DNA from: Octopus bimaculoides
Taxonomy: Eukaryota
Reading direction: 5' to 3'
Length of the DNA stretch: 35,353 nucleotides
Assembly: GCF_001194135.2 (NCBI RefSeq)
Contig: NC_068985.1
Span: 3,610,063-3,645,415, forward strand
Below the pieces are notes generated by a model. It saw nothing but the letters and a program-made list of their open reading frames with translations, ran no database searches and was not told the origin of the DNA. Positions within the stretch are counted from its first letter, which is position 1. The number at the start of each line of letters is the position of its first letter. A program made the translations under genes and the position numbers. Of the stretch, positions 11,812 through 34,867 are shown one piece after another.

Positions 11812-12546
11812 ATATATATATATATATATATANNNNNNNNNNNNNNNNNNNNNNNNNNNNNNNNNNNNNNNNNNNNNNNNNNNNNNNNNNNNNNNNNNNN
11901 NNNNNNNNNNNNNNNNNNNNNNNNNNNNNNNNNNNNNNNNNNNNNNNNNNNNNNNNNNNNNNNNNNNNNNNNNNNNNNNNNNNNNNNNNNNNNNNNNNNN
12001 NNNNNNNNNNNNNNNNNNNNNNNNNNNNNNNNNNNNNNNNNNNNNNNNNNNNNNNNNNNNNNNNNNNNNNNNNNNNNNNNNNNNNNNNNNNNNNNNNNNN
12101 NNNNNNNNNNNNNNNNNNNNNNNNNNNNNNNNNNNNNNNNNNNNNNNNNNNNNNNNNNNNNNNNNNNNNNNNNNNNNNNNNNNNNNNNNNNNNNNNNNNN
12201 NNNNNNNNNNNNNNNNNNNNNNNNNNNNNNNNNNNNNNNNNNNNNNNNNNNNNNNNNNNNNNNNNNNNNNNNNNNNNNNNNNNNNNNNNNNNNNNNNNNN
12301 NNNNNNNNNNNNNNNNNNNNNNNNNNNNNNNNNNNNNNNNNNNNNNNNNNNNNNNNNNNNNNNNNNNNNNNNNNNNNNNNNNNNNNNNNNNNNNNNNNNN
12401 NNNNNNNNNNNNNNNNNNNNNNNNNNNNNNNNNNNNNNNNNNNNNNNNNNNNNNNNNNNNNNNNNNNNNNNNNNNNNNNNNNNNNNNNNNNNNNNNNNNN
12501 NNNNNNNNNNNNNNNNNNNNNNNNNNNNNNNNNNNNNNNNNNNNNN

Positions 12547-14104: not shown

Positions 14105-14657
14105 NNNNNNNNNNNNNNNNNNNNNNNNNNNNNNNNNNNNNNNNNNNNNNNNNNNNNNNNNNNNNNNNNNNNNNNNNNNNNNNNNNNNNNNNNNNNNNNN
14201 NNNNNNNNNNNNNNNNNNNNNNNNNNNNNNNNNNNNNNNNNNNNNNNNNNNNNNNNNNNNNNNNNNNNNNNNNNNNNNNNNNNNNNNNNNNNNNNNNNNN
14301 NNNNNNNNNNNNNNNNNNNNNNNNNNNNNNNNNNNNNNNNNNNNNNNNNNNNNNNNNNNNNNNNNNNNNNNNNNNNNNNNNNNNNNNNNNNNNNNNNNNN
14401 NNNNNNNNNNNNNNNNNNNNNNNNNNNNNNNNNNNNNNNNNNNNNNNNNNNNNNNNNNNNNNNNNNNNNNNNNNNNNNNNNNNNNNNNNNNNNNNNNNNN
14501 NNNNNNNNNNNNNNNNNNNNNNNNNNNNNNNNNNNNNNNNNNNNNNNNNNNNNNNNNNNNNNNNNNNNNNNNNNNNNNNNNNNNNNNNNNNNNNNNNNNN
14601 NNNNNNNNNNNACATACATACATACATACATACATACATACATACATACATACATAC

Positions 14658-16684: not shown

Positions 16685-16774
16685 AGAGAATTCTTTGACA
16701 TGTGTAATTTCGTCATATTAAGTCGTTGTCTTTTTTTCTCTGCTCTTTCAGATTCTTTATTTTTCCCAACAGCG

Positions 16775-16863
16775 ATGGCCATACTTTACTATCTTCTCAC
16801 TTTGCTTCTTGTGCTTCCTTATAACTGGGCTTGGTATGATCCGCAACTGAGCGAATTAAACAG
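16775..16863 (+). CDS. Calcitonin-type neuropeptide precursor, coding exon 1 (signal peptide)
   Basis: Acceptor TTTTCCCAACAG at 16772, ATG at 16775, MAILYYLLTLLLVLPYNWA-WYDPQLSELN, donor AG|GTAAAT (phase 2). Confidence 0.85.
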
Positions 16864-17044
16864 GTAAATACCTTTCTGTTTTTTTTATGTCTTTTTTTTT
16901 TTCAATGTTCATAGGGTTGCATTAAAATGAACTCTCGAAGATATAGATACGCGCACACACACACACAAACACACACACACATTATTAATGCCATGTCTAT
17001 TTCTAAATCACGTGATCGACCAGAGTATAGGACGTTGTTATACA

Positions 17045-17195
17045 TCGCTGGTCACAATGCGCTTTGCATCATTTCAGCTTTCGCATGATGCCATCCCGCA
17101 TCATTCGAAACACAACGCGTCGCTTGGTCTGGGAAGCGAACCCACGATTACTAGATTGCTAGTGCAAAACACTAACCACTAGGCCACGCGCCCTC
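17045..17195 (-). mobile_element. SINE head (family of 4331-4576)
   Basis: ACACAACGCGTCGC...ACTAACCACTAGGCCACGCGCC matches 4490-4576. Confidence 0.75.
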
Positions 17196-17336
17196 TCCCA
17201 TTTAAATTCATATTTCAAAATATATTCAATACACGAAGATTAGGCATGAAATCACACTCACGTATAAGAGAACACGGTGTGCGCAAACTAGAAGCAACAC
17301 CCACACTTAATGAATGTAAGCTTACAAGGCATGATA

Positions 17337-17420
17337 CATACACATCACACATATTAGTCATACACATCAAACATATTAGCCATACACATCAGACATATTA
17401 GTCATACACATCAAACATAC
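17337..17420. repeat. 22-bp minisatellite, about 3.8 copies
   Basis: Unit CATACACATCA(C/A/G)ACATATTAG(T/C). Confidence 0.92.
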
Positions 17421-17770
17421 ATGACGGGGTCGGATGAAAAAGTATCCGGGTCGATGCTATAAAAAGAAAACTACACACACATGAGCCCGGCATTTAATCC
17501 CTTTCGAAGTAGTCCCCTTCCTGCGCCGTTTCCATTGATGGAAGCATTCCTGGAACTCCTTTTAAGGGACAACGAGCAGCTGCCTCAGTGCACACTTGTA
17601 TTTCTTCGATGTCTTGAAATCTTGCTGGGGTCTTCCACTGAAAAAAAAACTGAGCCTTGGCTTCGGGATCATAGCTACAGACCCACGATTCGTCACTTGT
17701 TATGACCGTTTTCAAAATGTTTTCGTCTTCTTCGACACAATCAAGGAGATCCTGCGCGGCTAAACCTCTA
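17419..17770 (-). mobile_element. Internally deleted mariner fossil with 3' TIR remnant
   Basis: QDLLDCVEEDENILKTVITSDESWVCSYDPEAKAQ..QWKTP is joined directly to RFQDIEEIQ...GDYFERD; a TIR-like GACGGGGTCGGATGAAAAAGTATCCGG lies at the left end. Confidence 0.88.
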
Positions 17771-18814
17771 TCGTATTTTTGAGACGACCACACTCTACAC
17801 ACTTTACTTCAAAGCACTTCTATAAACAACGGGCGTGGACGTGAACGTTATAACTTAACGATCAGATAAATGGTGATCAGATGATTATTAGTGTCGATCG
17901 AATAGGGAATTTACAAAAAAAAAAATTAAAAAATAAAGAAAAAAACTATTTTCTAAGTCTGGAAAAAATATATAGACACCAATCGCTAATTTGGTTTATT
18001 TGTTATATTTGTGAAAACAGTTATGAATAACAATGTATTGAAGGCGCTCGTGCTTTAGGATGAATTTCTAAATTTAGGATGAATTTCTAGATTTTTAATA
18101 ATCGGCGACGCACATGAATGTCTTTTTCGGTACCGAGTTCAAAGAACGCTGCTCTTCTCTCTTACAAAATGAGAACAAATTTGATTATGTTATTGTATTT
18201 CTATGGGATCATTGGCCAACCCGAACAAAGCTGACCTCCGTATAAATAACAATTCATTTACAAAAACTCCAAAATGCAATCAATGAAATCCACGCACATT
18301 GACAATGACATACGCATAAGCCTATAAACACAGACACACACACACACACACACACACAAACACTGATACAAACACACACGCACTTATATACACACACATA
18401 TACGCATACACACACACACACACACAAACACTAATAGAAACACAAACACACGCGCACACACACGCACACAAACATACAAACGCACTCACACAGAAATAAC
18501 CCCCCACACACACACACACATACACATGAAAACGTTGGTCCACGTAATGTTGTTGATATTCAAGCTTCAGGATGTCCCCAGCGCGTATCTACGACTTAAG
18601 AATATGAAGAAAAGATTTTCCTATAAAAAGACTGGCTTCATTTTTTACCATTTTGAAGTTTCTTTCTTGTCTTAATATCAATCTTCCGTAGAGTTGTGTG
18701 GGATCCGAAGGTAAGGTTTGTAGCCAAGTAAGTGGTGAGTGGCGGCGTACAAAAATGTTTTAAAACCTACTTCGCTAAGTATAGGATTAACTTAAGATTC
18801 GGCTGCTGTTTTTC

Positions 18815-19222
18815 AAATATTGGTTTCAAATTTTGGCACAAAGCCAGCAATTTCGGGAGAGGTGGTAAGACGGTCCCATTGCTCACTTGGTGCTTATTTT
18901 ATCGATCCCGATAGGGATGAAAAGCAAAGAAAACTTCGGCGGAATTTGAACTCAGAATAGAAGATGGACAAAATGCCGCTAAGATTTTGTCCGGCATGCT
19001 AACGATTCTTTTCTACTCTAGGCACAAGGCCCGAAATTTTGGGGGAGGGAGCCAGTCGATTAGATCGAATCCAGGACGCAACTGGCACTTAATTTATCGA
19101 CCCCGAAAGGGATGAAAGGCAAAGTCTACCACGGCAGAATTTGAACTCAGAATGTAACGACAGACGAATTACCGCTACGCATTTCGCCCGACGTGCTAAC
19201 GTTTCTGCTCGCTCGCTGCCTT
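18815..19222 (-). mobile_element. Two tandem SINEs (GCTGGCAGAATCG family)
   Basis: Two consecutive head-core-tail units; junction near 19009. Confidence 0.87.
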
Positions 19223-19678
19223 AAGGCTGTTTATCAAAAGCTAACAGGGAGTAATTCCATAGTGTTTCAATGAAGGACCTAATCCAATAATATAAAATTC
19301 CATATTCGTCATTTTAGCCTTAAGCTATTTATTATCCTGCAATACACTCGCACTGACTAGTTCACCTTACCAATGTGTCTCAAAGTTTATCTCACACCGC
19401 TGTGTGGAAACAAGCTGCGGTAGTTAAGAATCTAGTTGTTAAACATAGCTAAACAGTTTATCGATCTAGGATATGTTAGTGGTTATAACCTGTGTGAACT
19501 GGTATCCAATAGCAACTTGACCGACGTATTACGTTTAGATTACCATCTGACAACCGTTACTGTTAGTGAAACTGTCAATGTAGTATATCGGTTTTAGTTT
19601 GGATTATTGTCAGCATTCTTCCCTTCAGTTGTATGATGTTTCAACATAATGGAATGCTATGATGATCATACTTAATTT

Positions 19679-19865
19679 GGCACTCCGTCGGTTACAATGA
19701 CGCGGGTTGAAGTTGATCCGACCTGCGGAATAGCCTGCTGGTGAAATTAACATTCAAGTGGCTGAGCCCTCTGCACACACGCGTACGCTTAAAGTAGTTC
19801 TCAAGGAGAGTCAACATGACTCAGAAGATGACAAAGCTGGCCCTTTGAATGACAGGTACGACTCA
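19679..19865 (-). mobile_element. 3' module of the 1731-2111 SINE family
   Basis: TGGCACTCCGTCGGTTAC...GTGAAATTAAC...GCTGGCCCTTTGAA is the reverse complement of 1900-2111. Confidence 0.85.
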
Positions 19866-20092
19866 TCTGACCGAAATGAGTTGTACGTCTATTCATAGCT
19901 ATTCACTGGGGCATTAGGAGAGTCAGCTAAGTTGGTTTGGAAGACTGGGTGACTCAACAGACGTTTATATCTTCGCCTTTTTCGTTCGTTCTTTAAACAA
20001 TGTCTGCATGCATGAAATATACAGTATTAAACCGAAAATATATCACAGGATGAATAACTCTTTTCTCCCTTTTTTTCTCTTGTGGTTTACAG

Positions 20093-20170
20093 TATTCGTG
20101 TCAATCCCAGTGCAAGGGATGTGCCGCTAAACAGGTTTCAAAACAGACTTCAGACTCTTCTAAGACAAGC
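20093..20170 (+). CDS. Calcitonin-type precursor, coding exon 2
   Basis: Long pyrimidine tract plus TTTACAG acceptor; 78 nt, phase 2-2, (S)IRVNPSARDVPLNRFQNRLQTLLRQ(A); donor GC|GTGAGT. Confidence 0.83.
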
Positions 20171-20221
20171 GTGAGTATAATCTGCCACAACGGTTTGTTT
20201 CATGACCTTTACTTTTAATCT

Positions 20222-20430
20222 TTTATCTTTTACTTGTTTCAGTCATTGGACTACGACCATGCTGGAGCACAACCTTGAAGAATTTTTAGTCAAATTTATC
20301 GACCCCAGTGCTTTTTTTTAAAAACCTGGTACTTATTTCATCGGCTCCTTTAGCTGAATTGCTAAGTTACGGGAATGTAAACACACCAACACCGGATGTC
20401 AAGTAGTGGTTGGGACAAACACAGACACAA

Positions 20431-20432
<2 letters not shown>
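20222..20432 (-). mobile_element. 3' half of SINE (family of 5577-5950)
   Basis: TTTTACTTGTTTCAGTCATT...CCATGCTGGAGCAC... is the reverse complement of 5765-5940. Confidence 0.85.
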
Positions 20433-20484
<52 letters not shown>

Positions 20485-20495
20485 TTTCTCACACC

Positions 20496-20542
20496 GTCTC
20501 CGATGAAGGATATAAAAAATATCCTGGAAACAGCTGTAAGAC
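20496..20542 (+). ncRNA. Minimal type I hammerhead, variant core, in intron 2 (sense strand)
   Basis: GTCT-CCGATGA-AGGATA(TAAAAAA)TATCCT-GGAAA-CAGCTG-TA-AGAC: helix I GTCT/AGAC, 6-bp helix II, palindromic ACAGCTGT, GUA triplet; U4 is replaced by C. Confidence 0.78.
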
Positions 20543-20645
20543 CTATGTATAAATGTTCTAAANNNNNNNNNNAAAACTTTATATATATGAATGTATGTAT
20601 GTATGTATGTATGTATGTATGTATGTATGTATGTATGTATGTATG

Positions 20646-21102
20646 TCGTTATTCAATTTATTTCAAGATTTCTTGCCAATAGAGAAAGAACCGGTTTCTA
20701 ACCTAGATCCAAGGTTTCTTTACTGGAATTTCAACATCAACAACAGGGTATTTTTGTATGCATGTATGTATGTATGTATATATGTTCTATGTATGTATTC
20801 TCATGTATATACTTGCATGTCTAGACACGCTCATATATATTAAGATAATAAACTTCTGGAAAGTTTTCCAGATCTTTACAGTTCCGCTGATGGATTGGAT
20901 CTGTAGACTTCGAATCAGCTTTCTCCTTTCTGGTTTTGAGAAGCCTAATTTCTCAAGATTGGTATTTATGCAGTGTGAGACATATCCCAGCTCCCCAATA
21001 ATTACAGGTATAAACCTGAACTTATAACCTGGATAGAGTTACTGCAGATTTTTCAATAGTTCAGCATAGGTGTTCTCTTTTTCACTGATCTTCAGTTTTA
21101 TG
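20646..21102 (-). mobile_element. REL non-LTR element copy C, 3' end abutting (TATG)n
   Basis: Reverse complement aligns with 14790-15320 and ends AATAACGA|CATACATA; it carries its own stop (CAG TAA where copy B has TAG TTA). Confidence 0.9.
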
Positions 21103-21909
21103 AAGAAGGAGAAATTAAGAAGACGAAAGAAATGAATTTATTTTAGACTTGAAAGAGTTCAGGTCATAAGANNNNNNNNNNNNNNNNNNNNNNNNNNNNN
21201 NNNNNNNNNNNNNNNNNNNNNNNNNNNNNNNNNNNNNNNNNNNNNNNNNNNNNNNNNNNNNNNNNNNNNNNNNNNNNNNNNNNNNNNNNNNNNNNNNNNN
21301 NNNNNNNNNNNNNNNNNNNNNNNNNNNNNNNNNNNNNNNNNNNNNNNNNNNNNNNNNNNNNNNNNNNNNNNNNNNNNNNNNNNNNNNNNNNNNNNNNNNN
21401 NNNNNNNNNNNNNNNNNNNNNNNNNNNNNNNNNNNNNNNNNNNNNNNNNNNNNNNNNNNNNNNNNNNNNNNNNNNNNNNNNNNNNNNNNNNNNNNNNNNN
21501 NNNNNNNNNNNNNNNNNNNNNNNNNNNNNNNNNNNNNNNNNNNNNNNNNNNNNNNNNNNNNNNNNNNNNNNNNNNNNNNNNNNNNNNNNNNNNNNNNNNN
21601 NNNNNNNNNNNNNNNNNNNNNNNNNNNNNNNNNNNNNNNNNNNNNNNNNNNNNNNNNNNNNNNNNNNNNNNNNNNNNNNNNNNNNNNNNNNNNNNNNNNN
21701 NNNNNNNNNNNNNNNNNNNNNNNNNNNNNNNNNNNNNNNNNNNNNNNNNNNNNNNNNNNNNNNNNNNNNNNNNNNNNNNNNNNNNNNNNNNNNNNNNNNN
21801 NNNNNNNNNNNNNNNNNNNNNNNNNNNNNNNNNNNNNNNNNNNNNNNNNNNNNNNNNNNNNNNNNNNNNNNNNNNNNNNNNNNNNNNNNNNNNNNNNNNN
21901 NNNNNNNNN

Positions 21910-21986
21910 ACTCAGAACGCAGGATGAACGAAATACCGCTAAGCATTTCGTACCGGCGTGCTAACGATTCTGCCAGTTCGCTGCCT

Positions 21987-22030
<44 letters not shown>

Positions 22031-22195
22031 ATGGTTACAAATTTTGGCACAAGGCCAGCAGTTTCGGGGAAGGCGGTAAGTCGATTACATCGACCTCAAT
22101 GTTTTTGATCTCAGAACGGTATTTGAACTCAGAACGTCAAGACGGACGAAATGCCGCTAAGCATTTCTTCCGGCGTTGCTAACGATTCTGCCAGC
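21910..22195 (-). mobile_element. Two SINE fragments (GCTGGCAGAATCG family) separated by (AGT)n
   Basis: CTAACGATTCTGCCAG heads at ~21960 and ~22180; (AGT)n at 21988-22030; the second copy lacks part of the central module. Confidence 0.83.
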
Positions 22196-22382
22196 GTACA
22201 TACAGTCTATAGAATGCGTAAAAAGAACACTTTTCTCACCCGCAGCCATGATGCAATATCCGTTCCTGCTGTGGTTACCACGAGAGCATAGAATCATTGT
22301 CGAATAGATTGTACTACGGAAAAAAAAACAACCACACACTTACTGCGGCATACGACTCTCAGAAAAAACGGGCACTGCATCT

Positions 22383-22560
22383 GTCCCTCCGACAACGAGA
22401 GTTCCAGTTGATTCGATCAACGGAGCAGCTTGCTCGTGAAATTAACACGCAAGTAGCTGAGTACTCCACAGACACGTGTACCCTTAACGTAGTTCACATG
22501 GAGATCCAGTTTGACTCAGAATGACAAAGCTAACCCTTTCAAATACAGGTACTACTCCTT
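22383..22560 (-). mobile_element. 3' module of the 1731-2111 SINE family
   Basis: GCTCGTGAAATTAACACGCAAGT...CACAGACACGTGTACCCTTAACGTAGTT matches the reverse complement of 1990-2090. Confidence 0.85.
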
Positions 22561-23544
22561 TTTACATTGACCTAATCCATTGGGTCAATGTGAAATAAAG
22601 TGTCTTACTTGAGGACCGGAAATCGAACAAGTGCTTAGTGTGGTCCTTAACAAGTCCAGATACGTCTGAAGTGCTCGAACTGTGGGTTACTTTTGTTATT
22701 CCACCAACAGCTGATATGTCCATGATCTGACACAAGGCTCACAGGACACAAGACTTTATATAAACGAATCTTTATATAATCGTCATAGTTTCACAAACGG
22801 ATTTATATATTCTATAAGCTTATACTCTAAACAAAGATGTGAGTAAACAATTTCTTTCTTTATACATTAATGCGAAGCTGTGGTGGGGAATAAAACTTTA
22901 GGTTAGTTGAAATATTATTCTATCATACTTTATATTCTGCAATTTCCCGTGAAGAAAAAGAAAATTCTCACTTATAGAAAGGGTTAAATATATCGTTATC
23001 AGCTTAGTTGCGCCCACTTTGGGGTCCCTAGTTTCATTTCTGGCTCGTTGTCCTCCTTTGGTAGAGGATACCAAAGAGATGTGATCCTCAGTTGATTAGT
23101 AAACCGCCGTAGCTTTATAATAAATTAGTCAATACTAGTGACTGATTTGCATTCGTTGACCGCCCAATCTGAATAAATACTTAAATTGTTGTGTGAAGCA
23201 ATGATGGGAAATAAATTTTAGGTTAGTTCACATATGTTTGTGACATATTTTCACTTCTAAAGGCAATTTCTCCGGAGTTTACCGAGCTAGAAATTTATAA
23301 CGAGCCAGAATTCCATTTTGGGATCCAACAGAAGGCGCCACTGAAGTCACGATGATGTATTTATATATAAGAGAGAAATTTTTCTTGGTAAACTGCAGTG
23401 AAATTGCCTTTAGATGCATAAATATGTCAGAAACATATTTGAAATAACATGAAGCTTCTTCCTTTCTTTATGTAAATAAAACCAAAAACACACTTCCTTC
23501 AGATTCTTGATAAATATATTGTTTTTATTTTCTTTCTCTTATAG

Positions 23545-23728
23545 ACGGAAGAGAGGCTGTGATAGTAAAATAGGCGGCCTTGGAGGTCAGTGTCCAACGT
23601 ACCACACCTCGTTAGATTTAGACAGATGGCGTTATCTGGACAGTTCGCAGAGTCCCGGCCGGAGGAAGAGGAATATCATTCAATTAAAATCAAAACTGCT
23701 GCAGAAGCGTGGCACCAATCTTATGTGA
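23545..23728 (+). CDS. Calcitonin-type precursor, coding exon 3 (mature peptide)
   Basis: Acceptor TTTTCTTTCTCTTATAG, phase 2; RKR-GCDSKIGGLGGQCPTYHTSLDLDRWRYLDSSQSP-G-RRKR-NIIQLKSKLLQKRGTNLM*. An N-terminal Cys pair plus C-terminal Pro-amide between basic sites is the calcitonin-family signature. Confidence 0.88.
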
Positions 23729-23790: not shown

Positions 23791-23796
23791 AATAAA
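23791..23796 (+). promoter_or_regulatory. Candidate polyadenylation signal of the calcitonin-type gene
   Basis: First AATAAA after the stop codon (62 nt downstream); position only. Confidence 0.35.
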
Positions 23797-24045: not shown

Positions 24046-24673
24046 CACACACACACACATACACACACACACACACAAACACACGCGCGCGCGCGCACGC
24101 ACACACACACNNNNNNNNNNNNNNNNNNNNNNNNNNNNNNNNNNNNNNNNNNNNNNNNNNNNNNNNNNNNNNNNNNNNNNNNNNNNNNNNNNNNNNNNNN
24201 NNNNNNNNNNNNNNNNNNNNNNNNNNNNNNNNNNNNNNNNNNNNNNNNNNNNNNNNNNNNNNNNNNNNNNNNNNNNNNNNNNNNNNNNNNNNNNNNNNNN
24301 NNNNNNNNNNNNNNNNNNNNNNNNNNNNNNNNNNNNNNNNNNNNNNNNNNNNNNNNNNNNNNNNNNNNNNNNNNNNNNNNNNNNNNNNNNNNNNNNNNNN
24401 NNNNNNNNNNNNNNNNNNNNNNNNNNNNNNNNNNNNNNNNNNNNNNNNNNNNNNNNNNNNNNNNNNNNNNNNNNNNNNNNNNNNNNNNNNNNNNNNNNNN
24501 NNNNNNNNNNNNNNNNNNNNNNNNNNNNNNNNNNNNNNNNNNNNNNNNNNNNNNNNNNNNNNNNNNNNNNNNNNNNNNNNNNNNNNNNNNNNNNNNNNNN
24601 NNNNNNNNNNNNNNNNNNNNNNNNNNNNNNNNNNNNNNNNNNNNNNNNNNNNNNNNNNNNNNNNNNNNNNNNN

Positions 24674-24982
24674 AAAGTCGACCTCGGCGGAATTTGAACG
24701 CAGAACTTCAATACAGACGAAATACCACAAAGCATCTCGCCCGGCGTGCTAACGTTTCTTATTTCTTTATTGTCCACAGGGGGCTAAACATAGAGGGGAC
24801 AAACAAGGACAGACAAAGAGATTAGGTCGATTACATCGACCCCAGTGCGTAACTGGTACTTAATTTATCGACCCCGAAAGGATGAAAGGCAAAGCCGACC
24901 TCGGCGGAATTTGAACTCAGAACGTAACGGCAGACGTAATACCGGTAAGCATTTCGCCTGGTGTGCTAACGTTTCTGCCTTC
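24674..24982 (-). mobile_element. Two tandem SINEs (GCTGGCAGAATCG family)
   Basis: Junction near 24759; the left copy runs into a gap. Confidence 0.87.
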
Positions 24983-27700: not shown

Positions 27701-27789
27701 TTATATTTTTCATCCAAAGAACATCACAGAAAACACTATGTGCAGTAAATAAAGGTTCTCTGAATAGTTCGTGAATGTTGTTGATTTTT

Positions 27790-28930
27790 TTTTACACTCA
27801 GATCTTAGAAACACCTTATCGTTTCGCACCAATATCAATGCAGAAACACATCAACACCCATTCTTCGCTGCCTTTAATGATCCCCAGAATGGCTTGGCTC
27901 CCGCTGAGGCAGATCTATTCGGCACCTATTCTGTGTATGACGATCAATAATGGGTTCTTGCCTCGGAAAATTCCGATTAAAGCAATCTTGTTGCTTTAGA
28001 CATCGGAAAAGCCATCGATCGTGTCTGCGATGCGAGTCACTTATCGAAGTTCTTCACCTAAAGGTACCACACATCTTCTATCGCTTGGATCGACAGCTTC
28101 CAATCAAACCGCGCCGCCGCGAGATGGTGCTGACGTAATTCTTTCTGCTACACTCTCAATCAACAATGGTGTGTTCTCTGTTTTCCTTCTAGACATCAAT
28201 GACTTACCGTCAAGTGCAACAACAATACACACACACACACACACACTGATGATTTCTTCTTCTTCTCCTCCTCCTCCAACCCTACATCTTCCCCATGCAA
28301 CCTACACATCACGTGATTTGGTTGGTGGCTTGATTCCATGGACGGAAACCTCGACAAACTCGAACAAACTCAAATATTTCTCCTATCAAGAAAGAAATCG
28401 CATCCCACACCCCCACCCAGTCACCGAGATTAACCCCCACCTACAGCCTCCGTAGTTGGCCCAAATTCTTGGCCTCACTGTTACCAAGGATCACTGTTAC
28501 CGAAAGTAAATCCTTAACATAATTAGGATCGCATCCTTGAGATTAATCTTTCTCATCAGAAGAAAATATTTTCACTCCCGAACAATTGTCGGCATCCTAG
28601 AAAAGCTAAAGTGGGGTCCACAATGCAATGTTGCTTCCACAACTGGGCCGGTGCTGTTATTACACAAAAAGACATCGAGGACCGCATTCGGAGAAGGGTC
28701 ACTCGACATATACACATTACATGATTCACAGACACATATCAGCCTCTAACTCACAGGTTAGCTCTCTTCTCTCTCTCTGCTTTCTGTATGGCGATTATAA
28801 CACGTCTCTTCAATCCATGCCCCTCACCACCTGTTGTGTCCAACCCTGTACACTGTGGCAACTTGAGGGAGAAAGGACTGCGCCAGAACTCTGTTTGGCA
28901 TTCCTTACAGCTGCTTTTACTGGAGCAATA
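27790..28930 (+). mobile_element. Decayed LINE reverse transcriptase (CR1/Jockey group)
   Basis: NDPQNG, LVALDIGKAIDRV, SIAWIDSFQSNR, FLLDINDLPSS, QILGLTVT, HNWAGA, DRIRRR and QPLTHR appear in the expected order with frameshifts. Confidence 0.88.
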
Positions 28931-29269: not shown

Positions 29270-30409
29270 ATGTCTTGATCGAGTTCATAACATATCGCCC
29301 GTCCAGGAAGGGAACTCATAACTCAATGAATATGAGTCAAACACCCAAACTGCGAGGTCCCATGTTTCCATTTGAACACAAATTAAATATCAAGTATTTC
29401 TAACAAAGCCCTTCATCCGTAATAAAAGTATGCATTGCCTTATGTTATTCGGTGCTAAAGCATTCTATGTTTATTTCATCACTAACACGAATTGATACCT
29501 CCTCTTGTCCAACATCAGTTGTCCCATTGTAGTCTAGCGATTATATAAGTATCTCACTGTCTTCAGCCTGCCACGCTCCTGCCTGTTTTTCTGTTTCTTT
29601 TCTCTCGTTATATCGTCCATTGTCTCAATCTACCTCACCCACTCACCCGTTTCTAATATCACCCCTCTCTCAATCATTCTCTTTAATCAAATTATCCACC
29701 CACCAAAGCCGACTTTATTTCTTTTAATACGTCTCTGGTTTCTTAACGTTTTTATGAAAGACATCAACATCAAAACCGAAATTCGATATATCGGCCGTGA
29801 ATGAATGCATTTATTCTTAAATTCTATTGCGCTGCTTCCTTCTATTAAAGATTGTTTTATTTCACAATAAGGAGATGTGGGACTTGACCAACCGAAGAAT
29901 ACAAGACTGAATACACAAAACAGAGAGAAAACTAACAAGAACAAAAGAAGAACCCTCACCAGCAGTATCCTTTATACAACAATATCAATATCCCATGTTT
30001 CGCCATGTTATTCATGTAAATATAACTTGATACGTTTAAAGCTATTCATTGGAAATTTCATAAAACAATTGTTAATAATTGGCAGACGATAAATATAATT
30101 GTTCAATAAAGACGAACTTTAGAATTCGAGAGAGAATCTATTATATTAACTAAAGTAGTAGAATTTATAGAAAAAGGGCCATGAATTATGATTGTTTATT
30201 GCATATTTTATTTTTATTTTATGATAATATTGGTGAACAATGGCATAATGGGTTTTAGGATTTGAACTGATCAGTCACGAGTTGACTGCATTCCTGACGC
30301 TCATAACGGAAAGGAATTCAGTGCAACATATATCAGATAAAGCTATAAGTAATAGTATGGATGTATTGGGCTGAAAACCATTTGATGGTTGAAAAAAATA
30401 GCCGAAGAA

Positions 30410-30475
30410 TGTCCGTGGGACTCGAACCCACAGACACGACAGGCATTCAACCATTGAATCAATGCAATCCTTCAA
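30410..30475 (-). pseudogene. tRNA-like remnant (SINE head or tRNA pseudogene)
   Basis: Minus strand TGATTCAATGG (A-box-like) and a perfect T arm GTGGG-TTCGAGT-CCCAC; no complete anticodon or acceptor arm. Confidence 0.55.
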
Positions 30476-31319
30476 ATTTCTCGAACCATTTTAGAAACTT
30501 TATTCTTACCAGTGAGAATTGTACGCTGTCGGCTTTTTCTAGAAGATACCGTGTTGGTACAGTCGGTAGAGGTAGGGAGGCTCAGAAATGTAGTTTCCAG
30601 TAAAATAACACAAATGATACAGAAATTCATAACTTATTGAAGTTTGTTAAAACATCAAATACAAAATGTACGCACCATCCAAACATCCACACGGAAGATG
30701 ACAAGTCTTTCAGCAGTTTCACCGATATTGTCTGTCCAATTTTTCTGGAAAAAGAACAAAACAAAACAGAGGACGTTGAAGACTTCACAATATAATAAGA
30801 TTCCATAAATGTAATTAGAAATAATATTCAGCCATATTGATAGATCATCCATTAATGGTGACTATATCGATATTATGAAATTGGTTGTTGATCAAACGTG
30901 ATTTGAAAGTATTGGTCATTGTAATAATGATTTCTTACAGCCGGGTTACAAAAATGGTCGACATTTAAAACGTCTACGTCAGTATATTACAATATTATTT
31001 TTGTTCTTTCTCAGCTCAGTAATAGAATCTCACTGGAATCAATAAAACATCAGTTCCATAGAACTAAGTCATATTGTAGGAGGGGCAGCATATTTGATTG
31101 ACTTTGTTTTGCCACCACCCATTTCTCGATACGCTCTCTTGTTTTTTTTATACGACGGTTTACGCACAGCTCTAATTTATGCGCCAGACGATGATTAATT
31201 CTGAATACCCCCCTCCCCAGATTTATACAAACTAATTGCAGAGCATGTGAGGTTCTATACGCAATTCAGTAACGCATTCAAATGTGTCTCCCACCCAAAC
31301 TTCTGTTGTTCATCTAGAC

Positions 31320-34604: not shown

Positions 34605-34867
34605 GAATGAGGATAGAAAACTGATGCAGGGAGAGAAAAAGCATGTTTGGCGAACACGTTGAATTCATATATGGCCTACTTGGGTAAAAGAAAATACAGG
34701 AGGATCAGTTAATTATGATTTTATTTAACATATTCCCCTCACAGATTCATACACTTATTGCAGCGATCCTTCAGTTTTTCTAAGTCCTGTAAAAGAACTC
34801 TGAAGTTTGGTACTCCTACCAGGCTTTTCACGATGCCCTTAAAGCCAGGGACTTCTCAGTACCAACT

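What the first reader, a model, noticed from the sequence alone, without database searches (positions are those of the whole stretch)
16775..23728. Hidden calcitonin-type neuropeptide gene with an unusually large disulfide ring
Seen: three exons with canonical splice sites and matching phases (2/2) join into 351 nt, giving a 116-aa precursor with a signal peptide. The predicted mature 34-mer is GCDSKIGGLGGQCPTYHTSLDLDRWRYLDSSQSP-amide, between RKR and G-RRKR. Established: calcitonin-family peptides have an N-terminal Cys-Cys ring and a C-terminal Pro-amide, and bivalve calcitonin-type peptides end in similar YLxS..SP-amide (recalled, not searched). Unusual: 10 residues (Gly-rich IGGLGG) lie between the cysteines, versus 5 in vertebrate calcitonin. 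A second small peptide NIIQLKSKLLQ could be released between RKR and KR. The gene is not evident from the ORF track.
Basis: partly seen in the sequence, partly recalled or inferred. Interest (0 to 1): 0.78.

Follow-up and report, generated by a model that had tools for sequence, protein, structure and literature searches.

The report
Octopus calcitonin-type peptide gene, already annotated
The three exons do encode a real, conserved octopus hormone precursor of the calcitonin type, but public databases already hold this exact gene model, and its large disulfide ring has precedents in worms and mussels, so it is a modest addition and not a discovery.

Summary
Exons 16775-16863, 20093-20170 and 23545-23728 have GT-AG borders and join into 351 nt encoding the stated 116-aa precursor. 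Both assembly gaps lie inside intron 2. A gap-free Octopus sinensis locus has the same exons, order and splice sites.

The gene is not hidden. The protein is 100% identical to RefSeq XP_014768345.1 (Octopus bimaculoides LOC106867831), which UniProt names 'Calcitonin peptide-like domain-containing protein'. Orthologues are annotated in O. sinensis, O. vulgaris and Argonauta hians.

The calcitonin-type reading is supported:
- A profile built from octopod sequences alone finds accepted annelid and mollusc calcitonin precursors among 1.8 billion proteins.
- The peptide has the family's Cys pair, the 21-residue spacing from the second Cys to Pro, and SP-G-RKR.
- Selection is purifying (dN/dS 0.04 to 0.19).

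The 10-residue ring is not unprecedented. Capitella, Urechis and Mytilus calcitonin-type peptides also have 10. It is a 3-residue insertion relative to the closest subfamily, where 7 is the rule. The proposed second peptide is not conserved in Argonauta.

No paper I could search describes this peptide. Cardoso et al. 2020 list a different octopus paralogue. Expression, processing and the receptor remain untested.

The parts
16752..16774 (+). 5' untranslated part of the first coding exon. It follows an AG acceptor at 16750-16751, which implies at least one further upstream exon.
   Evidence: The O. vulgaris 131-aa isoform P0004 reads ...DSLFSPTA-M through this stretch. tblastn maps it to 16751-16783. 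The upstream exon was not found in the window or within 10 kb in L002.
16775..16863 (+). Coding exon 1: start codon, hydrophobic signal peptide (MAILYYLLTLLLVLPYNWAW) and the start of the propeptide. The donor is GTAAAT.
   Evidence: Mean Kyte-Doolittle hydropathy is 2.0-2.2 over residues 1-16. AlphaFold2 places a helix at residues 2-18. The exon is conserved in O. sinensis with 1 synonymous change and in Argonauta.
16864..20092 (+). Intron 1 (3,229 nt, phase 2).
   Evidence: GT...AG borders. The junction sequence AAACAG|TATTCG is contiguous in the mRNA contig L004 of a homologue.
20093..20170 (+). Coding exon 2: propeptide (SIRVNPSARDVPLNRFQNRLQTLLRQ). The donor is GTGAGT.
   Evidence: Conserved in L002 at 17568-17645 and in L003 at 17240-17317.
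20171..23544 (+). Intron 2 (3,374 nt as written, phase 2). It contains both assembly gaps, 20563-20572 and 21172-21909.
   Evidence: for gap positions. for collinearity with the gap-free L002, where the intron is 2,199 nt. A homologue in another species has a phase-2 intron at almost the same position.
23545..23728 (+). Coding exon 3: RKR cleavage site, mature peptide, amidation and cleavage signal G-RRKR, C-terminal flanking peptide, TGA stop.
   Evidence: 98% protein identity in L002. 72-75% identity to the two Argonauta copies.
23555..23656 (+). Predicted mature 34-residue peptide GCDSKIGGLGGQCPTYHTSLDLDRWRYLDSSQSP. A Cys2-Cys13 disulfide and a Pro-amide are inferred.
   Evidence: Coordinates read. 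Family alignment A4 shows invariant Cys, Cys, Pro and Gly. The spacing from Cys2 to Pro is 21 residues, as in 59 of 63 family peptides.
23657..23671 (+). Gly amide donor plus the RRKR convertase site.
   Evidence: G-R-[RK]-K-R is conserved in all octopod copies, and SPG[RK][RK]R across the family.
23672..23725 (+). C-terminal flanking peptide NIIQLKSKLLQKRGTNLM. It is poorly conserved, and the internal KR is Octopus-specific.
   Evidence: Annelid precursors end in a loosely similar ...LISGKLLQ tail.
23791..23796 (+). AATAAA polyadenylation signal, 63 nt after the stop codon.
   Evidence: The surrounding motif is conserved in O. sinensis and after both Argonauta terminal exons.

Best explanation
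This is the Octopus bimaculoides gene LOC106867831. It encodes a small secreted prohormone of the protostome, cysteine-containing calcitonin-type family.

Shown here:
- The exon structure and its conservation across octopods.
- Purifying selection on the coding sequence.
- Family-level sequence homology to accepted calcitonin precursors.
- The presence of all processing motifs.

Inferred from established prohormone biochemistry:
- The signal peptide is removed near residue 19-20.
- Prohormone convertases cut after R57-K58-R59 and after R95-R96-K97-R98.
- Carboxypeptidase trims the basic residues.
- Peptidylglycine alpha-amidating monooxygenase uses Gly94 to amidate Pro93.
- Cys61 and Cys72 form a 12-membered disulfide ring, with 10 residues between the cysteines.
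- The product would be a 34-residue amidated peptide of monoisotopic mass 3708.705 Da.

Inferred by analogy: the peptide would act as a neuropeptide or hormone on one or more calcitonin-receptor-like class B GPCRs, as shown for mussel peptides.

Its closest relatives are the 'b/II-type' peptides, with the pattern C-x-x-x-L-G-G-x-C-x-T...[WY]-x-Y-L-x-S-x-x-S-P-amide. Compared with them, octopods carry a 3-residue insertion in the ring and have lost the T-E motif.
For: Gene model:
- The spliced protein is 100% identical, over 100% of its length, to XP_014768345.1. UniProt names that entry 'Calcitonin peptide-like domain-containing protein'.
- Orthologues exist in O. sinensis and O. vulgaris (1 aa different) and in Argonauta (72%).
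- The three exons, their phases and their GT-AG sites are the same in the gap-free L002 and in L003.

Selection:
- O. bimaculoides vs O. sinensis: 7 synonymous and 1 non-synonymous change, dN/dS 0.04.
- O. bimaculoides vs Argonauta: dS about 1.0, dN/dS 0.19.
- The mature peptide is 29/34 identical to Argonauta, while the propeptide and the tail diverge more.

Family homology:
- The octopod-only profile A1 finds the Owenia calcitonin precursor P0008 (E 2.9e-5) and the transcript-derived P0009 (E 4.3e-4) in 1.84 billion proteins.
- Pairwise BLASTP gives 1e-14 (P0009) and 1e-9 (P0008).
- The widened profile recovers Urechis 'calcitonin-1' and 'calcitonin-2', Capitella CAPTEDRAFT_222382 and Lottia LOTGIDRAFT_151867. 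The last two are the precursors used by Cardoso et al. 2020.

Peptide architecture:
- Invariant Cys, Cys, Pro and Gly, and a near-invariant Leu.
- 21-residue spacing from the second Cys to Pro, as in 59 of 63 peptides.
- AlphaFold2 places a helix at residues 73-88, directly after the ring.

Intron conservation: a homologue with both mRNA and genomic contigs has a phase-2 intron 4 codons before Cys1. Octopus intron 2 is phase 2 and lies 5 codons before Cys1.

Receptor precedent: mussel CALCIIa, which also has a 10-residue Gly-rich ring, activates mussel receptor CALCRIIc (PMC7200681 abstract). That paper lists 13 octopus family B GPCR models, with no subfamily split shown in the text I read.
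Against: - I could reach no transcript or peptide evidence for the octopus gene itself. The exact protein occurs only on genome assemblies in the contig index.
- Pfam's calcitonin model does not match it. A profile of lophotrochozoan peptides finds no vertebrate calcitonin-family chain in the PDB. The link to vertebrate calcitonin therefore rests on published receptor orthology and shared motifs, not on a test made here.
- The post-ring segment is not measurably amphipathic: 1707 of 2000 shuffles reach its hydrophobic moment. P0009 (9/2000) and mussel CALCIIa (92/2000) are amphipathic by the same measure.
- The AlphaFold2 model has low confidence (mean pLDDT 60).
- A Pro follows Cys2 directly, and the family's T-E motif is T-Y here. 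Receptor specificity may therefore have shifted.
Confidence: 0.78

Rival explanations
1. It is a calcitonin-derived paralogue that no longer signals through calcitonin-type receptors. The ring insertion, the Pro after Cys2 and the loss of helix amphipathicity would have re-targeted it to another class B receptor (for example PDF-type) or to a non-neuronal role such as a salivary-gland secretion.
For: - The octopod tail has a low hydrophobic moment, unlike P0009 and mussel CALCIIa.
- The ring has 10 residues, against an invariant 7 in the closest subfamily.
- Octopus keeps a second, more canonical paralogue, GCTTNFEHLCSAQEAAELAELLRFLQSGEGP-amide.
- A 2025 eLife paper title reports peptides acting on both calcitonin-type and PDF-type receptors in a deuterostome (title and abstract only).
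- A scorpion calcitonin-like precursor carries the source name 'Venom protein' (P0041).
Against: - The peptide and its processing sites are under strong purifying selection, with the canonical 21-residue spacing and the YL-x-S-x-x-SP-amide end.
- Mussel CALCIIa, with an equally large ring, does activate a calcitonin-type receptor.
- No expression data point to a gland.
Confidence: 0.15
2. It is an annotation-pipeline artefact or a decaying gene. The three short exons would be joined by gene predictors but not expressed as a functional prohormone.
For: All octopus records are predicted models named 'uncharacterized' or 'hypothetical'. No transcript-assembly contig carrying the exact protein was found.
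Against: - Reading frame, splice sites, cleavage sites, both cysteines and the Pro-Gly are intact in four species. These include Argonauta at saturated synonymous divergence, with dN/dS 0.19.
- The CDS is 97.7% identical between Octopus species, against about 85-92% for neighbouring non-coding DNA.
- A homologue is present as spliced mRNA in 17 transcriptome contigs.
- The AATAAA and its surrounding 3'-UTR motif are conserved.
Confidence: 0.04
3. It belongs to a different family of cysteine-ring amidated peptides, and the calcitonin resemblance is convergent.
For: Pfam PF00214 does not match, and there is no PDB calcitonin-family hit.
Against: - The only non-repetitive hits of the exhaustive search are calcitonin-type precursors.
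- Homology with P0009 extends beyond the peptide into the signal peptide and the 'NSIR' propeptide, and to intron phase.
- Accepted lophotrochozoan calcitonin precursors also fail Pfam, so that negative result does not discriminate.
Confidence: 0.03

Closest known systems
Lophotrochozoan 'b/II-type' calcitonin-type peptides, e.g. Lottia gigantea CALCII (XP_009062318), Owenia fusiformis CAH1785545.1 second peptide, Capitella teleta third peptide, Urechis unicinctus calcitonin-1
   Same: - A single terminal peptide directly before SPG-[RK][RK]R.
- The L-G-G-x-C-x-T core.
- An aromatic-x-Y-L-x-S-x-x-S-P-amide end.
- 21 residues from Cys2 to Pro.
- A short basic C-terminal tail.
- 38-44% identity over the peptide.
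   Different: - The ring has 10 residues in place of an invariant 7; the MAFFT alignments place a 3-residue gap within the ring.
- Pro follows Cys2.
- T-Y replaces T-E.
- The helix segment is not amphipathic by hydrophobic moment.
Mytilus galloprovincialis CALCIIa (CTWGGGMSDEMCSTVDIDEIQRSFQVIHDRNSP-amide), Capitella peptide b and Urechis calcitonin-2 first peptide
   Same: A 10-residue, Gly-rich ring. The mussel peptide also has the 21-residue tail, and it activates a calcitonin-type receptor.
   Different: - Only 21-30% identity to the octopus peptide.
- These are the first or middle peptides of multi-peptide precursors.
- The annelid ones have 22-residue tails.
Octopus bimaculoides Obi.CALC (GCTTNFEHLCSAQEAAELAELLRFLQSGEGP-amide; WGS contig LGKD01399119.1; Cardoso et al. 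2020, PMC7200681, supplement)
   Same: The same species and the same family, with G-C at the N-terminus and the 21-residue tail ending P-G-RK.
   Different: - A different locus that is not in this window.
- A 7-residue ring and only 28% identity.
- No annotated protein carries it in the 5.8-billion-protein collection, whereas the window's gene is annotated but is not in that paper's list.
Vertebrate calcitonin / CGRP (CALCA) family
   Same: An N-terminal disulfide ring, a helix after the ring, a C-terminal Pro-amide in calcitonin, about 32 residues, and a precursor with a C-terminal flanking peptide. This rests on established knowledge and PMC6002491.
   Different: - Four to five residues between the cysteines.
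- No detectable sequence similarity by Pfam or by PDB profile search.
- In Octopus there is one terminal exon, not alternative CT and CGRP exons.
DH31-type peptides (protostome calcitonin-like diuretic hormone)
   Same: The same superfamily according to the literature, with a C-terminal Pro-amide.
   Different: DH31 lacks the cysteine pair. The octopus peptide has it.

Membership tests
Protostome cysteine-containing calcitonin-type peptide precursors | Significant sequence similarity to accepted members | tested here: met
   The octopod-only profile hits the Owenia precursor at E 2.9e-5 and P0009 at E 4.3e-4 in 1.84 billion proteins. BLASTP gives 1e-9 and 1e-14. The widened profile recovers Urechis calcitonin-1 and -2 and the Capitella and Lottia precursors.
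Protostome cysteine-containing calcitonin-type peptide precursors | A pair of N-terminal cysteines forming a ring (7-9 residues between them according to PMC6002491) | tested here: met
   Cys61 and Cys72 have 10 residues between them. In 63 distinct family peptides the ring has 6 to 10 residues. Ten occurs in Capitella, Urechis, P0021 and Mytilus CALCIIa. The disulfide itself was not tested.
Protostome cysteine-containing calcitonin-type peptide precursors | C-terminal Pro followed by Gly and basic residues (Pro-amide) | tested here: met
   S-P-G-R-R-K-R at residues 92-98. Pro and Gly are invariant in alignment A4. Amidation itself was not tested.
Protostome cysteine-containing calcitonin-type peptide precursors | Fixed length of the post-ring segment (second Cys to Pro) | tested here: met
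   21 residues in the octopod peptides and in 59 of 63 family peptides.
Protostome cysteine-containing calcitonin-type peptide precursors | Secretory precursor: signal peptide and basic cleavage site before the peptide | tested here: met
   The N-terminus is hydrophobic (mean hydropathy 2.0-2.2 over residues 1-16) and forms a helix at 2-18 in the model. RKR lies before Gly60. No dedicated signal-peptide predictor was available.
Protostome cysteine-containing calcitonin-type peptide precursors | [quoted passage not shown] | tested here: inconclusive
   AlphaFold2 predicts a helix at 73-88, but at pLDDT of about 60-79. The hydrophobic moment of the tail is 0.30, and 1707 of 2000 shuffles reach it.
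Protostome cysteine-containing calcitonin-type peptide precursors | Activates a calcitonin-receptor-like class B GPCR | not testable with these tools
   Only precedent exists: mussel CALCIIa on CALCRIIc. Octopus family B GPCR models are listed in the PMC7200681 supplement.
Protostome cysteine-containing calcitonin-type peptide precursors | The gene is transcribed and spliced as modelled | tested here: inconclusive
   There are no octopus transcript contigs in the index. Indirect support comes from conserved exons and splice sites in three other genomes. The homologous mRNA L004 is contiguous across the exon 1/2 junction, and a homologous phase-2 intron matches intron 2.
Vertebrate calcitonin/CGRP/amylin family (Pfam PF00214) | Match to the family profile | tested here: not met
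   There is no Pfam hit at E up to 10. The test does not discriminate, because eight accepted or candidate lophotrochozoan calcitonin precursors also give no hit. UniProt's name suggests that some other domain signature matches, but I could not check that here.
Vertebrate calcitonin/CGRP/amylin family (Pfam PF00214) | Sequence similarity to solved calcitonin-family peptides | tested here: not met
   Neither the peptide alone nor the 29-peptide profile finds any calcitonin-family chain in the PDB at E up to 10.
Vertebrate calcitonin/CGRP/amylin family (Pfam PF00214) | Ring with 4-5 residues between the cysteines | tested here: not met
   There are 10 residues here. Deuterostome peptides have 4-5 (PMC6002491).

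The most novel reading that the evidence does not exclude
Octopods carry a lineage-specific, strongly conserved calcitonin-type paralogue. Its ring grew by three residues and its helix lost amphipathicity, which would give it a receptor preference distinct from that of the canonical octopus paralogue. In Argonauta the locus has two complete alternative terminal peptide exons, so one gene could make two calcitonin-type hormones by alternative 3'-exon choice. That would be an independent parallel to vertebrate calcitonin/CGRP splicing.
Probability: 0.15. Interest if true: 0.55.

Novelty: new member of a known kind. Interest (0 to 1): 0.3.

Why it matters
Calcitonin-type signalling in molluscs has been tied experimentally to ion balance and shell mineralisation. 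For cephalopods, the papers I could search give only binding-site and immunoreactivity data plus a single predicted octopus peptide. This gene gives octopods a second, divergent calcitonin-type ligand. The pair could be tested against the octopus calcitonin-like receptors to ask how ligand-receptor pairs diversified in an animal with a reduced shell and a large brain. The practical gain is small, because the gene model is already public. What is added here is the explicit peptide prediction, its placement within the family, the finding that a 10-residue ring is not unique, and the Argonauta exon duplication.

Tried and rejected
1. Second peptide exon or relic in Octopus. tblastn of the window and of L002 finds only exon 3. 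A weak hit at L002 27613-27702 (E 0.03, with an internal stop) has no counterpart in the orthologous window stretch 30150-30510, so I treat it as chance.
2. The published octopus peptide Obi.CALC. It is not encoded in this window, and no annotated protein contains it. Its linkage to this gene could not be tested.
3. The upstream 5' exon encoding MSKRGHE of the O. vulgaris isoform. It was not found in the window or in 10 kb of L002.
4. Pfam on the precursor gives no hit. The control shows that accepted family members also fail, so the result is uninformative.
5. PDB sequence searches return only chance hits, such as T-cell receptor gamma chains at E about 0.2.
6. Three other significant hits of the exhaustive search (P0005, P0006, P0007) are internally repetitive proteins whose scores add up over 6-8 repeats. 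I rejected them as spurious.
7. The species of the homologue P0009/P0017 could not be identified. Run accessions gave no usable paper. I therefore cannot say whether the 7-residue-ring homologue is a squid orthologue or comes from another mollusc.
8. Rfam finds nothing in the window at gathering thresholds. Six other long ORFs have no Pfam match.
9. Full-text searches for the peptide sequence, gene id and accession numbers found no paper.

Full report
**1. What is in the sequence**

- 16775-16863 starts with ATG and ends ...AAACAG|GTAAAT.
- 20093-20170 follows ...GGTTTACAG| and ends ...ACAAGC|GTGAGT.
- 23545-23728 follows ...CTCTTATAG| and ends in TGA.

Joined, they give 351 nt. Both introns are phase 2.

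The window has nine N-runs. The two flagged ones, 20563-20572 and 21172-21909, lie inside intron 2 (20171-23544), so no codon or splice site depends on unread bases.

**2. Continuity across the gaps**

The window is part of O. bimaculoides chromosome CM046605.1 (assembly GCA_001194135.2). Locus L001 is base-for-base identical to window 6775-33728, gaps included.

The orthologous O. sinensis locus L002 has no N at all. It has the same exons at 10001-10089, 17568-17645 and 19845-20028, with the same donor and acceptor sequences, and an uninterrupted 2,199-nt intron 2. blastn shows the window to be collinear with L002 on both sides of the gaps: 20483-20562 matches 18260-18341, and 22771-24098 matches 18639-20399. 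The gaps therefore hide only intronic, repeat-rich DNA.

**3. The gene is not hidden**

The spliced protein is 100% identical over 100% of its length to XP_014768345.1 ('uncharacterized protein LOC106867831', O. bimaculoides). The same sequence is UniProt A0A0L8HYE1, which UniProt names 'Calcitonin peptide-like domain-containing protein'.

Other annotated octopod records:
- XP_029637143.1 (O. sinensis) and CAI9723354.1 (O. vulgaris) differ by one residue, L108Q.
- CAI9723353.1 is a 131-aa isoform with an N-terminal extension.
- GAB1598914.1 is the Argonauta hians orthologue, 72% identical in the alignment.

The extension reads through the 23 nt upstream of the ATG, which follow an AG acceptor at 16750-16751. 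The gene therefore has at least one more 5' exon. I did not find that exon.

**4. Evidence that it is a functional coding gene**

- Between the two Octopus species the CDS has 8 differences in 348 nt, 7 of them synonymous (dN/dS 0.04). Flanking and intronic DNA is about 85-92% identical.
- Against Argonauta, synonymous sites are saturated (dS about 1.0) while dN is 0.19 (dN/dS 0.19).
- Conservation is highest where a bioactive peptide is expected. The 34-mer is 29/34 identical. RKR, both Cys, P-G and the basic site are invariant. The propeptide and the C-terminal tail diverge.
- An AATAAA lies 63 nt after the stop, inside a motif conserved in O. sinensis and Argonauta.
- I found no octopus transcript contig carrying the protein, so direct expression evidence is missing.

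There is indirect support from a homologue. P0009 occurs on 17 transcriptome contigs. Its mRNA is contiguous across the sequence AAACAG|TATTCG, which is the octopus exon 1/2 junction. A genomic contig of a close relative (L010) shows a phase-2 intron (TG|G) four codons before Cys1. Octopus intron 2 is phase 2 (GC|A) and lies five codons before Cys1.

**5. Which family**

Pfam gives nothing. A word-indexed search finds only the octopod orthologues.

The exhaustive HMMER search of 1.84 billion representatives, using a profile made only from octopod sequences (A1), gives six hits at E <= 0.001.
- One is the Argonauta orthologue.
- Three are internally repetitive proteins whose scores sum over 6-8 repeats. 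I discard these.
- Two are informative. P0008 (E 2.9e-5) is an Owenia fusiformis protein with two peptides, TCAIGGGLSHHC...SP-GRRRR and NCLFNLGGHCATEKAASVADQWHYLNSAISP-GRKRR. P0009 (E 4.3e-4) is a transcript-derived protein ending in CRLNLGGRCATEIASDLVKAWHYLNSANSP-GRKRR.

Pairwise BLASTP gives 1e-9 for P0008 and 1e-14 for P0009. With P0009 the similarity also covers the signal peptide and an 'NSIR' propeptide motif.

A profile including these two sequences recovers named or published calcitonin precursors:
- Urechis unicinctus calcitonin-1 and calcitonin-2.
- Capitella CAPTEDRAFT_222382 and Lottia LOTGIDRAFT_151867, which are the reference precursors in Cardoso et al. 2020.
- An Elysia protein with the same UniProt calcitonin-like name.

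Accepted family members also fail Pfam, so the Pfam negative carries no weight. A profile of 29 lophotrochozoan peptides does not find vertebrate calcitonin-family chains in the PDB. The tie to vertebrate calcitonin is therefore taken from the literature (PMC6002491, PMC7200681) and was not shown here.

**6. Peptide anatomy against the family**

I extracted every C-x(n)-C...[PA]-G-basic peptide from the retrieved precursors, the Cardoso supplement and the scallop paper.
- Post-ring length (second Cys to Pro) is 21 residues in 59 of 63 distinct peptides. It is 21 in all three octopod peptides.
- Ring sizes are 7 (43 peptides), 8 (9), 9 (3), 10 (7) and 6 (1).
- The seven 10-residue rings are the three octopod peptides, Capitella peptide b (CDVSGGNAGYSC), the first peptide of Urechis calcitonin-2 (CDISAGNAGYAC), P0021 (CNVGAGMPGYQC) and Mytilus CALCIIa (CTWGGGMSDEMC).

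Cai et al. 2018 had already noted 7-9 residues in protostomes against 4-5 in deuterostomes. Mytilus CALCIIa is the one mussel peptide shown to activate a mussel calcitonin-type receptor. So the ring is large only by vertebrate standards.

Within the family, the octopod peptide is closest (38-44% identity) to the 'b/II-type' peptides, whose ring is invariably 7 residues. The alignments place a 3-residue insertion in the octopod ring and retain the L-G-G-x-C-x-T core. The lineage-specific differences are the insertion, Pro after Cys2, and T-Y in place of T-E.

The central helix is predicted by AlphaFold2 at residues 73-88, with block pLDDT up to 79 and a mean of 60 for the whole model. Its hydrophobic moment is no higher than that of shuffled sequences, unlike P0009 and mussel CALCIIa. 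I score that feature as inconclusive.

**7. The proposed second peptide**

NIIQLKSKLLQ depends on a KR that is present only in Octopus. Argonauta has ...NITSKSENQHPTNFM and, in its second exon copy...SIIQFKSKMQHHSNLH. The tail loosely resembles the C-terminal flank of annelid precursors (...LISGKLLQ). It is more likely an ordinary flanking peptide than a conserved second hormone.

**8. Relation to what is published**

Cardoso et al. 2020 list one O. bimaculoides calcitonin-like peptide, GCTTNFEHLCSAQEAAELAELLRFLQSGEGP-amide, from WGS contig LGKD01399119.1. It is a different gene:
- It is not in this window.
- It has a 7-residue ring.
- It is absent from annotated proteins.

Full-text searches for the window's peptide, gene id and accessions found nothing. 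Cephalopod neuropeptide papers I could open do not describe it. The Sepia neuropeptidome paper (J Proteome Res 2016) is not in the searchable library, so I cannot exclude a cuttlefish orthologue having been reported there.

**9. How it most likely works**

Shown: the gene structure, its conservation, family homology and the processing motifs.

Inferred from standard prohormone biochemistry:
- Signal-peptide removal.
- Convertase cleavage at RKR and RRKR.
- Carboxypeptidase trimming.
- Amidation of Pro93 using Gly94.
- A Cys61-Cys72 disulfide.
- The product would be a 34-residue peptide of 3708.705 Da.

Inferred by analogy with the mussel data: signalling through calcitonin-receptor-like class B GPCRs.

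The main rival (15%) is that the ring insertion and altered helix have shifted the receptor or the site of action. An annotation artefact (4%) or membership in another family (3%) is unlikely.

**10. Verdict**

However, the gene model is already public and already carries a calcitonin-like label. The ring size has precedents. The second peptide is not conserved. This is a new, uncharacterised member of a known peptide family, with a modest lineage-specific twist. Interest 0.3.

Noticed in passing
L003 (Argonauta hians BAAFZT010000005.1) 27777-27954 and 34659-34833: Argonauta has two intact copies of the terminal peptide exon behind a single exon 1 and exon 2. The unannotated copy encodes QKR-GCNSQVGGLGGQCPTYNASVDLDRLRYLNSAQSP-GRRKR-SIIQFKSKMQHHSNLH*. 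Both copies have a phase-2 AG acceptor, a stop codon and AATAAA about 60 nt downstream. They are old duplicates (dS 1.56) under purifying selection (dN/dS 0.16). This layout would allow alternative terminal exons, as in vertebrate calcitonin/CGRP. Octopus has only one copy.
   Followed up: partly
window 16750-16774: An AG acceptor lies 24 nt upstream of the ATG, and the frame stays open through it (DSLFFPTA-M). The O. vulgaris 131-aa isoform CAI9723353.1 uses it with an upstream exon encoding MSKRGHE. That exon was not found in the window or in 10 kb of the O. sinensis locus.
   Followed up: partly
L004-L009 (mRNA contigs, runs SRR7369732 and SRR82816xx) and L010-L012 (genomic contigs, runs ERR12370320 and others): These carry a homologous precursor (P0009/P0017) from unidentified, closely related species. 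It shares the signal peptide, the 'NSIR' motif and the intron phase with the octopus gene, but has the canonical 7-residue ring (CRLNLGGRC). If it comes from a squid or cuttlefish, the ring insertion would be octopod-specific.
   Followed up: partly
not in window (WGS contig LGKD01399119.1, from the PMC7200681 supplement): The only octopus calcitonin-like peptide listed in that paper, GCTTNFEHLC...GEGP-amide, has no annotated protein in the 5.8-billion-protein collection. Conversely, the annotated gene in this window is missing from that paper.
   Followed up: partly
window 2601-3179, 6035-6201, 9721-9730, 10720-11146, 11833-12546, 14105-14611, 20563-20572, 21172-21909, 24111-24673: Most of the nine assembly gaps (at least six) are bordered by microsatellite-like repeats, seen as (TH)n, (CV)n, (IY)n or (YVCM)n runs in the ORF translations. 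The gaps probably mark repeat arrays that short reads could not span.
   Followed up: no
window 24760-24979, 19054-19224, 21910-22000, 24674-24759: A short interspersed repeat of roughly 170-220 bp recurs in the window and at five or more places in the O. sinensis locus at 80-92% identity. Some copies lie in introns 1 and 2.
   Followed up: no
window 17494-17802 (- strand), inside intron 1: A 102-aa ORF (...DESWVCSYDPEAKAQ...) recalls a mariner-type transposase fragment, from memory. Pfam gives no match at E <= 0.01.
   Followed up: partly
P0041 (Hadrurus spadix, UniProt A0A1W7R946): A scorpion protein that its source names 'Venom protein' is a two-peptide calcitonin-like precursor with 8-residue rings. 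It surfaced at E 1.2e-3 in the family search.
   Followed up: no
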